A DNA stretch of 64,000 nt from Penicillus capitatus. Its lineage: Eukaryota > Plantae > Chlorophyta. Where the stretch lies: the NCBI GenBank assembly GCA_965649825.1, contig OZ287694.1:557197-621196 (forward strand). The letters run 5' to 3'. Of this stretch, positions 10,387-13,032 are shown piece by piece. Under the pieces are notes generated by a model. That model saw only the letters and a program-made list of their open reading frames with translations, ran no database searches and was not told where the DNA came from. The position numbers and the translations under genes were made by a program. Position 1 is the stretch's first letter, and every line of letters starts with the position of its first letter.

Positions 10387-11799
10387 TCAAAAGCCAGTCA
10401 TGGCGAGTTTCACGATGGCGTGGGTCTCTTCTTCAGTCTGCACGACTCCGTGAAAAGACAGGTGTGATGCGGAGAGATCGATCGCACTTGTATGCCATTC
10501 TTCTGCGTTTGGAGTTCTTTGTTCATGTCCATGGCGCCCTTGGGAAGATCCGTCTGAAACCATCGATGTTCCATGATTCCTTCCATGTCGATGCGTTGGG
10601 TTGGATCCTTGTCCAATATCTTGTGCAGCAGGTCGCTCAGATCGGCAGAGATGGCGGGATGATCAGGGATCGTTAACGGCGCTTCTGCAATTCTCTGGCG
10701 ATGAACAGGATCGATAGCAGAGGCAAAGAATGAGGTGACTGCTCACTGTCATCATTCGTTGCGGTTTGTCTTGCCGATCGAGACTTCTTTTTTCGGTGTT
10801 ATCAAAGGGATACGATGCAAAAATCATGGTGTAAAGAAAGAATCCACACAACCAAATGTCCGCTTTCTGTAAGCGACACGCAGACACACGTCATCTTCGG
10901 GATGTCGAGCAATGGAACGGGTACTTTGCTGTCATACGTCTGTCCTTGCCTTGTTGCGAAGATGGCCTCTGGTGCCATGTAGGCAGGCGTGCCCACTCTC
11001 GGATGCGTCGATCCACACATATCGTTCTGTGCAGAACGGAATGTCGAAAAAAAAGCTTAGATGACAAGACAGACACGGCTTACCTGGCTATACCTAAAGC
11101 CACAGATTTTGAGGAGAGGCCATTGGCCACTACTCAGCAGAGCATGTTCAAGCTTGATATCATGACTTGTCACTCCCAGTTGATGGCAGTAATCTAAACT
11201 GATGATAAGCTGCTGAAAAAACCAGCGTGTCTGATTCTCGTTGAGTCCGTCTTTCTTCTTAACCAGATCCAACAGATCGCCACCCGGAGCGTACTCCGTG
11301 ACGATGCATAAGTGTCGGGGCGTCAAGTATACCTAGAAGTTTATCACACATCGCAATTTAGCAATGCTGTAGAGAATTTGCGACAACTGAACAACCTCTT
11401 CAAACTGGATCACGTGATGATGAAGTAAGTTTCGATGGTTCATAATCCCTTGCAACACATGCTCGTCGATCTGTCATCACAGTTCGACATTGGCGGAGTC
11501 TTTCGCCGGATGCATGTGCTTTACTTTTTCCCCGCGTTCGATGCACTTGACGGCATACTGCTCTCCTGTGCATTTGTTTTGAGCCAAGTGGACGGAGCCG
11601 AAGTCTCCGGAGCAAATGCCTTTGACCTGCCGTTGCGTCGAAAGCACTTCATCGGCAACACATTCCTTTGCTGTTTGCTTGCCTTCTTGTAGTATCTCTC
11701 ATTTCTGAGAGGCGGTGCGTCCATGAGCTGTGAAGAGGGCTGCGGTGGTAGATACTCGACGGCTTCTTGGTCTCCTTCTCGCTTGTCCCTCTCCTCCTC
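10387..11799 (-). CDS. SnRK2-derived Ser/Thr kinase domain with degenerate catalytic motifs (predicted pseudokinase), copy 1, multi-exon
   Basis: Spliced translation: VKGICSGDFGSVHLA..YAVKCIERGEK|IDEHVLQGIMNHRNL..QFEE|VYLTPRHLCIVTEYAPGG..SHDIKLEHALL..LKICGFRYS..VGTPAYMAPE..KADIWLCG..HRWF. The AVKxIERGxK IDE and LTPxHL motifs are typical of SnRK2. Confidence 0.85.
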
Positions 11800-11874
11800 C
11801 TTGCAAATACGCAACATCAATGGCATGCGACAGAGAAATGGATGCAGACAGAAGCGGCGGGGTCATCTGCACGT

Positions 11875-12021
11875 TGTCGTGTTCGTCAGGACGGGTTAAC
11901 GACGAAGGCGTAAAGCTTAAAAGACTGTTCTGACAAGTAATGTTCGGTCTTTATACGCGTCGATGTGACATTTGACGCGTCCCGTGGCAGCTGCACGAAG
12001 GTGGACAGCTGTCCACTGACA
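11875..12021. mobile_element. 147-bp insertion flanked by a duplicated ACGT, with short TGTC...GACA inverted ends
   Basis: Absent from the paralogous site at about 24450, where a single ACGT is present. ACGT occurs at 11871-11874 and 12022-12025. A perfect 16-bp palindrome gtggacagctgtccac lies at 12001-12016. Confidence 0.5.
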
Positions 12022-13032
12022 ACGTGCATGCTGACTGTGCGCTTCGTTCAATTCATCCCCAAGAGGGTGTCCATTTTCTGTCTCGGTCTCGCAATTCTCC
12101 GACCCGTCGATTCTGACTGGGAAACTCACAAGAGTCTTGGCCGACGAACTGGTAATCGGCTCTCCCGATGTGATTTCGGTTTTGGTCACCGGGTCCTTCT
12201 CATGTCCGCGTCGCAGCCGCTCCTCAATGCTGGCCCTCTCACAAGTGACACCCGAGTCTTTCAGCACGACTGTGTCCCTCTTGACCTCCTTGCTGTTGGG
12301 ACAACAACAGAGCTGATCAAGAAGACCGGCAGACAAATCTGAAGATGGTGCTTTTTCTTTCTGCTCAAATGACTCGTAAATGGCATCGATGATATGCTTC
12401 AGCTCATACTCCAGCAGCTGGTCTTTATCTCTTCGCGCCTCGCGCATGTACTCCTTCAGCACAGCCAAGTCCTGCAACTTGGCTTCGACTGTTCTGGAAT
12501 GCTCTTTCATCATGTCAACGAGGATTGTCTTCATCTCCTCTGTCCCTTCCAGATTCCTGTTGAATGCCTTCTCCATTTCGTCCTTCCACACCCTCGTCTG
12601 ATGCGTCGATGCCGCCACGCTGTCGAACTTGGCTTGGCGAAGATTGTCTTGGAGGGCGAGAATGGATTGGCGCATTTCTTCCGTAATCGGCAGACTGGCC
12701 AAAAGCAGCTGTTGCAGCACGTGTTCCAGCTTCTGTGCTACGTGCTTCAGCTTCTCGTTGTTCCGCGAATCGAACAACGTCCCTGTCAAACGTGTGGACT
12801 TGCAACAGTCTTCTATGGCTTGGTCGGCTGCATTAAACGCGTGGAGCATGAGGTCCAGCGCTGCGAGCAGTGAGGGGTCATCCACGTGAAGCTGCTCCAG
12901 TGTCTGCAGAAACGGCTTCGTTTGTTCCGCCAAAGAGGCGAGCAGTTTGCACTCTTCGGCATTCATAACGGCGAGTGCTGCACGGTCGGCGATGCCTTCG
13001 GTCACCTTTAGGACCACGCTTATGACATCCAT
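11917..13032 (-). CDS. MLKL/RPW8/PUB-N-terminal-like helical bundle + coiled coil + degenerate U-box, copy 1
   Basis: 371-aa ORF. The N-terminus AVMNAEECKLLASL..PFL..L..L..A..IEDC..T fits the MLKL-NTD-like pattern by eye. The C-terminal LCCCPNSKEVKRDTVVLKDSGVTCERASIE..DPVT is U-box-like. Confidence 0.75.
   Translation of the reverse strand: MDVISVVLKVTEGIADRAALAVMNAEECKLLASLAEQTKPFLQTLEQLHVDDPSLLAALDLMLHAFNAADQAIEDCCKSTRLTGTLFDSRNNEKLKHVAQKLEHVLQQLLLASLPITEEMRQSILALQDNLRQAKFDSVAASTHQTRVWKDEMEKAFNRNLEGTEEMKTILVDMMKEHSRTVEAKLQDLAVLKEYMREARRDKDQLLEYELKHIIDAIYESFEQKEKAPSSDLSAGLLDQLCCCPNSKEVKRDTVVLKDSGVTCERASIEERLRRGHEKDPVTKTEITSGEPITSSSAKTLVSFPVRIDGSENCETETENGHPLGDELNEAHSQHARCQWTAVHLRAAATGRVKCHIDAYKDRTLLVRTVF

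What the first reader, a model, noticed from the sequence alone, without database searches (positions are those of the whole stretch)
10387..13032. MLKL-like architecture assembled from green-lineage parts: helical-bundle N-terminus + U-box + SnRK2-derived pseudokinase
Seen in sequence: a helical N-terminal domain, coiled coil and U-box lie less than 250 nt upstream of an intact kinase frame, with the same arrangement at two paralogous loci. The kinase keeps the VAIK lysine but loses the alphaC Glu (REI to QGI), HRDxKxxN (to SHDIKLEH) and DFG (to GFR). Established knowledge: animal and plant MLKL proteins combine a membrane-disrupting four-helix bundle with a regulatory pseudokinase, and SnRK2 kinases are plant stress/ABA kinases. 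Inference: a convergent cell-death or immune switch that uses an SnRK2 scaffold and has a built-in E3 ligase domain. I do not recognise this combination as described.
Basis: partly seen in the sequence, partly recalled or inferred. Interest (0 to 1): 0.8.

Follow-up and report, generated by a model that had tools for sequence, protein, structure and literature searches.

The report
U-box ligase fused to dead SnRK2 kinase
A green-alga gene family has swapped the target-binding end of an ordinary plant-type U-box ubiquitin ligase for a catalytically dead copy of a SnRK2 stress kinase. It is an unreported domain combination, but the two copies in this window look damaged, and nothing shows that it is an MLKL-style cell-death switch.

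Summary
On the minus strand (13032-10387) lie a helical N-terminus, a long coiled coil and a U-box, followed by eight short exons of a SnRK2-type kinase. The kinase has lost the alphaC Glu, the catalytic-loop Asn and the DFG Asp. A paralogue lies at 23436-25957 (+).

The N-terminus is predicted to fold like the MLKL four-helix bundle. However, this bundle plus the U-box is the standard N-terminal module of plant PUB E3 ligases (UND/MCAfunc), here found in siphonous green algae (Bryopsidales).

Close relatives carry an uncharacterised ~300-aa C-terminal domain or ankyrin repeats after the U-box. None of 148 representative relatives has a kinase. In this lineage a SnRK2 duplicate replaced that domain, and about 50 codons of the old domain survive as a 'tail'.

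Paralogues keep all splice sites and reading frames, with dN/dS of 0.2-0.45, so the family is or recently was functional. Fusion into one transcript is likely but unproven.

Copy A has a degenerate U-box and a 147-nt inverted-repeat insertion in the tail. Copy B has a 5-nt frameshift.

Best reading: a PUB-type E3 that uses a dead SnRK2 as its recognition or regulatory module. It is a new variant of a known kind. The cell-death reading is not excluded but has no support.

The parts
10387..13032 (-). Gene A, whole unit: N-terminal bundle, coiled coil, U-box, tail, linker and SnRK2-like pseudokinase. The product is 641 aa under model F1. Under model F2 it is 682 aa if the insertion is spliced out.
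   Evidence: Exon model. Splice sites and reading frames are conserved in the paralogues.
12697..13032 (-). Residues 1-112: four-helix bundle (helices 3-19, 25-48, 53-78, 81-111), MLKL_N/UND/MCAfunc-like.
   Evidence: AlphaFold model with pLDDT 83. The top Foldseek hits are MLKL N-terminal domain. Pfam MLKL_N E = 0.012 and PUB10_N E = 0.017, both below cut-off. dN/dS 0.2-0.3.
12553..12684 (-). Residues 117-160: two brace-like helices after the bundle.
   Evidence: The Foldseek alignment with MLKL N-terminal domain covers 154 columns, including its brace.
12352..12540 (-). Residues 165-227: one long helix (coiled coil).
12136..12306 (-). Residues 243-299: U-box, degenerate in this copy (CPN for CPI, RDT for KDP, TCER for TYER, EERL for E[ED]WL, PITS for LIPN).
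   Evidence: Pfam U-box 24.3 bits against cut-off 21.4. The paralogues score 56.8 and 58.8 bits. Lineage-specific replacements at otherwise invariant sites.
11850..12129 (-). 'Tail': the reading frame continues past the U-box. It is homologous to the start of the C-terminal domain of relatives (ELNEAHSQH / ELYEGRGQH versus GLYEGHGQL). It is either coding (model F2) or the first part of a 330-nt intron (model F1, donor CTT|GTGAGT at 12129).
   Evidence: Six paralogues show no indel or stop over about 125 nt, whereas true introns of 50-60 nt nearly all carry indels.
11875..12021 (.). 147-nt insertion with terminal inverted repeats (CACGTTGTC...GACAACGTG). It is present in the window copy only and interrupts the tail frame, giving a 371-aa ORF.
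   Evidence: Absent from the 97%-identical L001. Inverted repeats, and no other copy in the window or loci. Removing 12023-11867 as a GT..AG intron restores the frame.
11800..11849 (-). Candidate short intron 1 (model F2: donor TCT|GTCTGC, acceptor CAAG|). It holds all the indels between paralogues, the stop of the read-through ORF and a conserved TGATG.
11683..11799 (-). Linker exon (EEERDKREGD...NERYYKK). Its 3' end is the N-terminal 'RYxK' of SnRK2 kinases. It ends at a GC donor.
   Evidence: Its length is a multiple of 3 in all paralogues and the AAG|GCAAG donor is conserved. The junction RYYKK|VKGICSG aligns without a gap to P0009 RYRKISDINSG.
11627..11682 (-). GC-AG intron (56 nt).
10387..11626 (-). 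Pseudokinase exons 3-9: 11626-11525, 11470-11396, 11332-11084, 11026-10925, 10866-10747, 10694-10488 and 10437-10387 (includes the SnRK2 box and the stop).
   Evidence: Pkinase E = 3e-51. SAPK10/SRK2E E about 1e-67. dN/dS about 0.4 between paralogues.
11543..11554 (-). AVKC: the VAIK lysine is retained.
11444..11455 (-). LQGI: the alphaC Glu is lost (active relatives have YEI/REI).
11144..11167 (-). SHDIKLEH: catalytic loop (parent SRDIKLEN). Asp kept, Arg->His, Asn->His.
11093..11101 (-). GFR in place of DFG: the Mg-binding Asp is lost. Paralogues have GFK, SPF and SPL.
23436..25957 (+). Paralogue B. It has the same exon structure and a canonical U-box. Its kinase is more degenerate (RPEIKLED, SPF). 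Exons 2-9: 24525-24641, 24699-24800, 24854-24928, 24993-25241, 25298-25393, 25453-25527, 25600-25812 and 25862 to about 25957.
23825..23829 (+). 5-nt insertion (CAACT) in B, causing a frameshift and a stop at codon 177. It is absent from the 92%-identical L004.

Best explanation
This is a lineage-specific member of a family of PUB-type U-box E3 ubiquitin ligases in a siphonous green alga (Bryopsidales, by the closest named kinases).

The inherited part is the N-terminal module: an MLKL_N/UND-like four-helix bundle, brace helices, a coiled coil and a U-box. In relatives this module is followed by a variable C-terminal domain, either an uncharacterised ~300-aa domain or ankyrin repeats. More distant relatives carry ARM/HEAT repeats, as land-plant PUBs do. 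By analogy with land-plant PUBs, that domain is the partner- or substrate-binding end.

In this sub-family a genomic duplicate of a Bryopsidales SnRK2 kinase, with its introns, landed about 50 codons into the old C-terminal domain and replaced it.

Inferred mechanism: the product is spliced into one protein. In it a catalytically dead SnRK2 fold acts as bait or sensor. It would bind what SnRK2s bind (PP2C phosphatases, activating kinases, other SnRK2s or their substrates). It either presents them to the U-box for ubiquitination or places the ligase under SnRK2-pathway control.

Shown: the domain identities, the domain swap, the single origin, the loss of catalytic residues in every copy, and purifying selection on all three domains.

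Inferred: splicing into one protein, and the bait/sensor role.

The window's own copies are probably impaired. A has a U-box without its E2-contact residues and an insertion in the tail. B is frameshifted.
For: - Domains: Pfam Pkinase, U-box, and weak MLKL_N and PUB10_N hits.
- Fold of residues 1-165.
- The profile search recovers 9189 relatives. The nearest are Bryopsidales proteins (Caulerpa lentillifera P0141, P0147, P0149) and transcript-sized Logan contigs (P0138, P0142, P0144, P0146, on contigs of 2.2-6.4 kb). They carry the N-terminal module plus the ~300-aa domain or ankyrin repeats. Further out are PUB10_N/MCAfunc + U-box + ARM proteins.
- No kinase in any of 148 representatives, while 24 carry the ~300-aa domain.
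- The tail is homologous to the start of that domain.
- The kinase nests in the Bryopsidales SnRK2 clade, sister to the active P0009. All the pseudokinases are monophyletic in a neighbour-joining tree.
- SnRK2 genes are reported as expanded in Bryopsidales (bioRxiv 10.1101/2023.11.22.568388).
- All 8 kinase-part splice junctions, including the GC donor, and all reading frames are kept in A, L001, L004, L005 and B. Exon indels are multiples of 3, and most intron indels are not.
- dN/dS: N-terminus 0.2-0.3, U-box 0.2-0.4, kinase about 0.4.
- The DFG Asp and alphaC Glu are lost in every copy.
- Only 0-5 nt lie between the stop of the read-through ORF and the nearest ATG before the kinase's first exon. 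In L004 and B that ATG is out of frame, whereas a spliced fusion is in frame in all copies.
Against: - There is no transcript evidence at all. Every database protein of the family is a prokaryote-style ORF call on a genomic contig.
- The acceptor needed for the fusion is AAG (GAG in L003), not the YAG seen at all seven other acceptors.
- The read-through ORF of 354 aa is conserved in length in five paralogues, so a stand-alone U-box protein may be the product, or one of the products.
- Two relatives (L003, L007) have the U-box module with no kinase behind it.
- Copy A's U-box is degenerate, and both window copies carry potentially disabling lesions.
- The bait/sensor role rests on analogy only.
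Confidence: 0.5

Rival explanations
1. MLKL-like executioner. The four-helix bundle is a membrane-permeabilising or channel-forming killer domain. It is held in check by the pseudokinase and released on a stress or pathogen signal. The U-box would add self- or target-ubiquitination.
For: - Predicted fold match to the MLKL N-terminal domain, including the brace, and to NRG1 CC-R.
- Pfam MLKL_N is above cut-off in some more distant relatives (P0196 47.8 bits).
- The homologous MCAfunc domain of plant MCA proteins is reported to confer Ca2+ influx (PMC8049495).
- The family shows birth-and-death evolution, recombination between paralogues and a repeat-rich neighbourhood, as immune gene families often do.
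Against: - The same bundle heads thousands of ordinary PUB E3 ligases, for which (to my knowledge) no killing activity is known.
- The bundle is not adjacent to the pseudokinase. A coiled coil, a U-box and about 80 linker residues intervene.
- Relatives carry non-kinase C-terminal domains, so the bundle plus U-box works without any kinase fold.
- The pseudokinase is CAMK/SnRK2-type, not MLKL-type.
- There is no functional data.
Confidence: 0.12
2. Two products, not one. The locus would make a 354-aa bundle + U-box protein that ends at the conserved stop, and a separate SnRK2-like pseudokinase. The second would be translated from its own ATG a few bases downstream, from an overlapping transcript, a bicistronic mRNA with stop/start coupling at TGATG, or alternative isoforms.
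For: - The read-through ORF stays open for 53 codons, with no indel in its first ~41 codons and the same end point in five paralogues.
- The tail descends from coding sequence.
- In-frame ATGs follow the stop directly in A, L003, L005 and L006, within a conserved TGATG.
- The fusion acceptor is non-consensus.
- Polycistronic mRNAs are known in green algae (my own knowledge, not checked here).
Against: - In L004 and B the conserved ATG is out of frame with the kinase because of a 1-nt deletion, yet the kinase exons and splice sites are kept.
- There is no room for a promoter between the two ORFs.
- Reinitiation after a 354-codon ORF would be unusual.
- All indels fall in a 50-nt stretch that has the size of this genome's introns and sits between a conserved GT and an AG in matching phase.
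Confidence: 0.2
3. The window's two copies are dead or dying genes of a family that is functional elsewhere in the genome. Nothing is made from A or B in this haplotype.
For: - B: 5-nt frameshift and a stop at codon 177.
- B versus L004 kinase dN/dS is 0.92.
- A: ten lineage-specific replacements at otherwise invariant sites, against 0-6 in the other copies. They include the U-box E2-contact positions.
- A: a 147-nt insertion that truncates the tail frame.
- Other family members are visibly broken: L003, L006, and L007 with repeated sequence directly after the truncated U-box and a reverse-transcriptase ORF about 3 kb downstream.
Against: - A's allele L001 lacks the insertion, and its 9 exons are intact in both haplotypes. 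All changes in exons 2-9 between A and L001 are non-synonymous and there is no stop.
- The insertion is harmless if exon 1 ends at GTGAGT (F1) or if the element is spliced out.
- A dead U-box can still serve as a non-catalytic partner.
- B's 5-nt insertion could be an assembly error.
Confidence: 0.3

Closest known systems
Plant U-box (PUB) E3 ligases with a U-box N-terminal domain: UND-U-box-ARM, e.g. Arabidopsis PUB10/12/13. Pfam PUB10_N, PUB2_N and MCAfunc + U-box + Arm. 'Type I/III' of Nishii et al. 2021, PMC8049495.
   Same: The same N-terminal module in the same order: helical bundle, coiled coil, U-box. It is recovered by profile search over query positions ~17-305 at E about 1e-17 to 1e-20. 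A variable C-terminal domain follows the U-box.
   Different: The C-terminal ARM repeats are replaced by a SnRK2-derived pseudokinase. The host is a chlorophyte, whereas PMC8049495 reported the domain as absent from chlorophytes after testing only Chlamydomonas and Volvox. Copy A's U-box has lost its E2-contact residues.
Bryopsidales paralogues with bundle + U-box + an uncharacterised ~300-aa C-terminal domain (P0136, P0138, P0142, P0146, Caulerpa P0141) or + ankyrin repeats (Caulerpa P0147, P0149).
   Same: The N-terminal module is 33-64% identical. The first ~50 residues of their C-terminal domain survive as the 'tail' in the window family.
   Different: They have no kinase. The window family has lost all but the start of the ~300-aa domain.
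SnRK2 kinases (Arabidopsis SRK2E/OST1, rice SAPK10; chlorophyte SNRK2/SAC3-type).
   Same: Best sequence match over the whole kinase domain and the SnRK2 box. Nested in a Bryopsidales SnRK2 clade, 63-64% identical to the active kinase P0009.
   Different: The alphaC Glu, the catalytic-loop Asn, the DFG Asp and the activation-loop Ser are lost. The acidic C-terminal tail is missing. It is placed behind a U-box module.
MLKL (animal) and plant MLKL: four-helix bundle/HeLo + brace + pseudokinase.
   Same: Predicted N-terminal fold (TM 0.5-0.67 to human MLKL N-terminal domain). A catalytically dead kinase fold at the C-terminus.
   Different: The bundle and pseudokinase are not contiguous. The kinase comes from a different kinase group. 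A U-box is present. No evidence of killing activity. The bundle was inherited together with the U-box, not recruited to a kinase.
Monocot MCAfunc/ARPK + Pkinase proteins (PMC8049495) and class IV PUBs (kinase followed by U-box).
   Same: They combine the same bundle family, or a U-box, with a kinase domain.
   Different: MCAfunc + Pkinase is listed without a U-box. [quoted passage not shown] As I recall, class IV PUBs have the kinase N-terminal to the U-box, of RLCK type, and no bundle; this was not checked here.

Membership tests
PUB-type U-box E3 ligase with UND (class II/III-like) | U-box domain recognised by the curated model | tested here: met
   PF04564 scores 24.3 bits against cut-off 21.4 in A, and 56.8 and 58.8 bits in paralogues L005 and L004.
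PUB-type U-box E3 ligase with UND (class II/III-like) | N-terminal helical UND/PUB10_N/MCAfunc domain directly upstream of the U-box | tested here: met
   Pfam PUB10_N is below cut-off in A itself (16.2 against 32.6 bits). However, a family profile retrieves PUB10_N/MCAfunc + U-box + ARM proteins aligned over query positions ~17-305 at E about 1e-17.
PUB-type U-box E3 ligase with UND (class II/III-like) | C-terminal ARM repeats | tested here: not met
   No Arm hit. The C-terminus is a Pkinase domain.
PUB-type U-box E3 ligase with UND (class II/III-like) | Conserved U-box residues that contact the E2 (CPI Ile, DPV Pro, helix Trp, LIPN) | tested here: not met
   A has CPN, RDT, EERL and PITS. 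The paralogues keep the consensus. Ligase activity itself cannot be tested here.
MLKL family | N-terminal four-helix bundle with brace (MLKL_N fold) | tested here: met
   On a predicted structure only: the top 8 Foldseek PDB hits are MLKL N-terminal domain (TM 0.5-0.67, probability 0.96-1.0, E 0.02-0.4). Pfam MLKL_N is below cut-off in A (15.5 against 27 bits).
MLKL family | Brace helices lead directly into the pseudokinase N-lobe | tested here: not met
   A 60-residue helix, a U-box, the tail and the linker (about 175-215 residues, depending on the gene model) lie between them.
MLKL family | Pseudokinase of the MLKL/RIPK-related lineage | tested here: not met
   All PDB sequence matches at E <= 1e-40 are SnRK2 kinases. 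The database hits are chlorophyte SnRK2.
MLKL family | Membrane permeabilisation or cell death on activation | not testable with these tools
   Needs expression assays.
SnRK2 kinases | Kinase domain orthologous or paralogous to SnRK2, with the SnRK2 box after it | tested here: met
   The alignment to SAPK10 runs through residue 300 of the chain, including the box. The neighbour-joining tree places it inside the Bryopsidales SnRK2 clade.
SnRK2 kinases | Intact catalytic residues (alphaC Glu, catalytic-loop Asn, DFG Asp) | tested here: not met
   QGI, SHDIKLEH and GFR in A. All paralogues also lack the DFG Asp and the alphaC Glu.
SnRK2 kinases | Acidic C-terminal regulatory tail (domain II) | tested here: not met
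   A ends 16 residues into the SnRK2 box (TEEETHAIVKLAMTGF*). P0009 continues with an acidic tail.

The most novel reading that the evidence does not exclude
A convergent, MLKL-like death or wound switch in giant coenocytic algae. A membrane-active four-helix bundle would be gated by a SnRK2-derived pseudokinase that senses the SnRK2 stress pathway. A built-in U-box would set its own lifetime or mark targets. The family would diversify by birth-and-death, as immune receptors do.
Probability: 0.1. Interest if true: 0.8.

Novelty: new variant of a known kind. Interest (0 to 1): 0.4.

Why it matters
- If the fusion is expressed, it is a natural example of an E3 ligase recruiting a dead kinase as its recognition or regulatory domain. 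The group concerned, Bryopsidales, has expanded SnRK2 signalling and has unusual wound biology.
- It also extends the UND/MCAfunc + U-box module to chlorophytes, where the domain was reported absent.
- It shows that the module's C-terminal partner is freely exchanged: an unknown ~300-aa domain, ankyrin repeats, ARM repeats or a kinase.
- It gives a concrete way to test whether the PUB N-terminal bundle, which looks like the MLKL executioner domain, has any membrane activity.
- As it stands it is a lineage-specific domain swap with no expression data, and the two copies in this window are probably impaired.

Tried and rejected
1. First gene model (F1): exon 1 ends at CTT|GTGAGT (12130) with a 330-nt intron. 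It is kept only as an alternative. The 'intron' is homologous to coding sequence of relatives, has no indels in six paralogues, and would be three to six times longer than every other intron.

2. Listing all GT/GC..AG pairs that keep the frame between the U-box and the linker exon gave 123-183 solutions per copy where the output could be read (A and L003), so it cannot decide the junction.

3. Codon-position counts in the tail (19/15/23 variable sites out of 41 codons) are too weak to prove coding.

4. Search for a transcript or a fused protein in the databases:
- The N-terminal query found only 8 proteins, all genomic ORF calls.
- The kinase query found no near-identical protein.
- The representative search found no relative with a kinase.
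- A scan of JGI metagenome contigs found no relative.

5. Distant homologue L002 (JGI BBAY70): no kinase downstream, and the contig ends 374 nt after the gene.

6. The ancestral ~300-aa C-terminal domain has no Pfam match and no PDB sequence match.

7. Rfam found nothing in the window.

8. An assembly artefact or chimera is rejected. The same arrangement occurs at five loci on four contigs of another assembly, plus the window.

9. 'HRD lost' is rejected as stated. The parent clade already has SRD/NRD.

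
Full report
**What is in the window**

The finding lies on the minus strand of a eukaryotic sequence of about 50% GC.

An ORF starts at the ATG at 13032. It encodes a helical region of about 230 residues and a U-box-like segment. Downstream, a kinase is split over short exons in changing frames.

Using canonical splice sites I built a nine-exon model giving a 641-aa protein:
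- 13032-12130
- 11799-11683
- 11626-11525
- 11470-11396
- 11332-11084
- 11026-10925
- 10866-10747
- 10694-10488
- 10437-10387

Pfam results on this protein:

| Family | Residues | Score |
|---|---|---|
| Pkinase | 338-602 | E = 3e-51 |
| U-box | 243-299 | 24.3 bits, cut-off 21.4 |
| MLKL_N | 8-112 | E = 0.012, below cut-off |
| PUB10_N | 29-135 | E = 0.017, below cut-off |

A second copy (B) lies at 23436-25957 on the plus strand. It is 84% identical in DNA.

**The organism and the kinase**

The kinase part matches chlorophyte SnRK2 kinases. The closest named proteins come from Caulerpa lentillifera (56% identity) and Ostreobium quekettii (52%). Both are Bryopsidales.

In the PDB, the best sequence matches are rice SAPK10 and Arabidopsis SRK2E. 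The E-value is about 1e-67, and the alignment runs into the SnRK2 box.

The closest active relative is P0009 (63% identity, from transcript-sized contigs). It has SRDIKLEN, DFG and YEI. So the parent already lacked the His of 'HRD'. The real losses in copy A are the alphaC Glu, the catalytic-loop Asn, the DFG Asp and the activation-loop Ser.

In a neighbour-joining tree the pseudokinases of A, B, L004 and L005 form one long-branched group. That group is sister to P0009, inside a Bryopsidales clade.

The Bryopsis genome preprint reports that SnRK2 genes are expanded in Bryopsidales. It gives GC contents of 45.9% for Bryopsis, 52.4% for Ostreobium and 40.4% for Caulerpa (10.1101/2023.11.22.568388). 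The window's GC of about 51% is closest to Ostreobium. This is only a hint.

**The family**

The N-terminal query found eight proteins. All are prokaryote-style ORF calls on metagenome contigs. I fetched their loci.

| Locus | Relation | State |
|---|---|---|
| L001 | 97% identical to the A region | Lacks a 147-nt insertion that the window has |
| L004 | 92% identical to the B region over 8.4 kb | No frameshift |
| L004, L005 | Paralogues | Kinase behind the U-box; every splice junction kept, including an AAG\|GCAAG GC donor |
| L006 | Paralogue | Kinase behind the U-box; strongly degenerate |
| L003 | Paralogue | No kinase; repeated sequence follows the U-box module |
| L007 | 60% identical, another sample | No kinase; truncated U-box followed by repeated sequence, with a reverse-transcriptase ORF further downstream |

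In L004 and L005, exon length differences are multiples of three. Most intron length differences are not (L003 and L007).

The junction RYYKK|VKGICSG aligns without a gap to RYRKISDINSG of P0009. This fixes the GC-AG intron.

Pairwise dN/dS between paralogues:

| Region | dN/dS |
|---|---|
| Helical N-terminus | 0.2-0.3 |
| U-box | 0.2-0.4 |
| Kinase | about 0.4 |
| Linker exon | 0.3-0.9 |

The family therefore is, or recently was, under purifying selection in all three domains. Every copy lacks the DFG Asp (GFR, GFK, SPF, SPL) and the alphaC Glu. This suggests that the kinase was already dead in the common ancestor of the family.

Different segments of the paralogues show different nearest neighbours. 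For example, L004 and L005 have dS 0.1 in the U-box but 0.44 in the N-terminus. This indicates recombination or gene conversion.

**What the N-terminal module is**

A profile of the family was searched against 1.84 billion representative proteins. It found 9189 relatives, 45 of them below E = 1e-30.

The nearest full-length relatives are:
- 612-653-aa proteins on an ENA contig and on transcript-sized Logan contigs
- Caulerpa lentillifera proteins

They have the same bundle, coiled coil and U-box. After the U-box they carry either a ~300-aa domain with no Pfam or PDB match, or ankyrin repeats.

Further out the hits are land-plant-type PUB proteins: PUB10_N/PUB2_N/MCAfunc + U-box + ARM. In these the same N-terminal region also hits MLKL_N and RPW8. 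In some relatives MLKL_N is above its cut-off (P0196, 47.8 bits).

Nishii et al. (PMC8049495) describe exactly this shuffling for the MCAfunc/ARPK domain. Its partners there are U-box + Arm (oldest), U-box alone, PLAC8, and Pkinase in monocots. They report the domain as absent from chlorophytes, but they tested only two volvocine algae.

None of the 148 best representatives contains a kinase. Twenty-four contain the ~300-aa domain.

**Fold**

With seven sequences the model of residues 1-301 was poor (pLDDT 61). Even so, it already ranked MLKL executioner domains and the NRG1 CC-R domain first.

With 65 sequences the model of residues 1-165 reached pLDDT 83 and pTM 0.72. It has helices 3-19, 25-48, 53-78, 81-111, 118-133 and 140-164.

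Foldseek results against the PDB:
- The eight best matches are all human MLKL N-terminal domain.
- Probability is 0.96-1.0 and TM is 0.5-0.67.
- 139-166 columns are aligned.
- AtMLKL3 and mouse MLKL appear lower in the list.
- E-values are modest (0.02-0.4), as is usual for helical bundles.

However, the fold is a property of the whole PUB N-terminal domain family, not of this gene.

**Origin of the arrangement, and the open question of the junction**

The reading frame of exon 1 does not stop at the GTGAGT I first took as its donor. In five paralogues it runs on for 53 codons to a stop, giving ORFs of 354-355 aa.

This tail aligns with the start of the ~300-aa domain of the relatives. Compare ELYEGRGQHTRAEN with GLYEGHGQHKRPDG. 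It is therefore a remnant of the old C-terminal domain. The SnRK2-derived sequence begins right after it.

Six paralogues show no indel over about 125 nt of the tail. All indels fall in the next ~50 nt. That stretch begins with a conserved GT(C/A)TG and ends in AAG/GAG just before the linker exon. It also holds the stop and a conserved TGATG.

This suggests a second model (F2). In F2 the tail is coding, and a 50-nt intron (11849-11800), of the size usual for this gene, joins it in frame to the linker exon in every copy. That includes L004 and B, where a 1-nt deletion puts the nearest ATG out of frame.

The alternative is that the locus yields a 354-aa U-box protein and a separate pseudokinase, which would start at an ATG 0-5 nt after the stop. 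This cannot be excluded. The acceptor needed for fusion is not the YAG seen at the seven other acceptors, and no transcript-derived protein of the family exists in any collection searched.

My estimates are about 0.6 for a spliced fusion, 0.2 for two products, and the rest for unexpressed copies.

**State of the two copies in the window**

Copy A has ten replacements at sites that are invariant in all other paralogues and three outgroups. The other copies have 0-6. The replacements include I246N, P254T, Y264C and N295S, and separately the helix Trp->Arg (residue 271), in the U-box. A's U-box scores 24 bits against 57-59 bits for L005 and L004. It is probably not an active ligase.

The window allele of A also carries a 147-nt element with terminal inverted repeats inside the tail:
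- Under F2 the element truncates the protein at 371 aa.
- If 12023-11867 is spliced out (GT..AG), the frame is restored and the product is 682 aa.
- Under F1 the element is harmless.

Copy B has a 5-nt insertion that shifts the frame at codon ~131 and brings a stop at codon 177. Its 92%-identical counterpart L004 is intact. The kinase dN/dS between B and L004 is 0.92.

**Interpretation**

The best-supported reading is a PUB-type E3 ligase whose exchangeable C-terminal domain has been replaced by a dead SnRK2 fold.

By analogy with the ARM, ankyrin and other C-terminal domains of its relatives, the pseudokinase would bind partners. The most obvious candidates are the partners of SnRK2 kinases. 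It would either deliver them to the U-box or put the ligase under their control. This step is inference.

The MLKL-like death-switch reading remains possible, because the bundle is MLKL-like and its MCAfunc relatives are linked to Ca2+ influx. It has no specific support here, and the domain layout differs from MLKL.

The combination is, as far as I can find, undescribed. I rate it a new variant of a known kind. Interest is moderate, limited by the lack of expression evidence and by the damaged state of the window's copies.

Noticed in passing
window 11875-12021 (gene strand 12023-11867): A 147-nt element with terminal inverted repeats (CACGTTGTC...GACAACGTG). It is present in this haplotype and absent from the 97%-identical contig L001. 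On the gene strand it begins with GT and is followed by GTGCAG, so removing 157 nt as an intron keeps the reading frame. It behaves like an introner or MITE. No other copy was found in the window or in L001-L007.
   Followed up: partly
window 1-3391, 15394-21080, 53507-58517: Three copies of a 3.4-5 kb repeat (92-96% identical). Shorter repeats lie at 7263-8614 / 27582-28937 and 14601-15220 / 28584-29203. The gene family sits in a repeat-rich, segmentally duplicated region.
   Followed up: partly
window 30000-36000; ORF 30834-33437 (+): A GC-rich island (60% GC against about 50%) with an intronless 867-aa ORF that hits Beta_helix, Chlam_PMP and NosD. Homologous 899- and 907-aa ORFs lie upstream of the paralogues L003 and L005, so it may belong to the duplicated unit. 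Its bacterial-looking domains raise the question of horizontal origin.
   Followed up: no
window 43196-47158 (-): An uninterrupted 1320-aa ORF with no Pfam match.
   Followed up: no
window 47360-47458 (-): A tRNA-Leu(CAA) gene of 99 nt, the only tRNA in the window. No Rfam family reached threshold anywhere in the window.
   Followed up: no
P0136 residues ~325-630 and 23 other representatives; remnant at window 11850-12129: A ~300-aa C-terminal domain that starts PGLYEGHGQL. It is attached to the bundle + U-box module in Bryopsidales and has no Pfam family and no PDB sequence match. It is an uncharacterised domain and probably the ancestral partner of this module in these algae.
   Followed up: partly
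window ~11815-11826 and the same place in L001, L003-L006 and B: A conserved TGATG between the stop of the read-through ORF and the linker exon. It could be a branch site (similar xGATG motifs sit in several other introns of the gene). It could also be a stop/start overlap.
   Followed up: partly
Caulerpa lentillifera proteins P0141, P0147, P0149; relatives: The MLKL_N/MCAfunc-like bundle + U-box module is present and expanded in chlorophyte (ulvophyte) algae. PMC8049495 reported the MCAfunc domain as streptophyte-specific after testing only Chlamydomonas and Volvox.
   Followed up: partly
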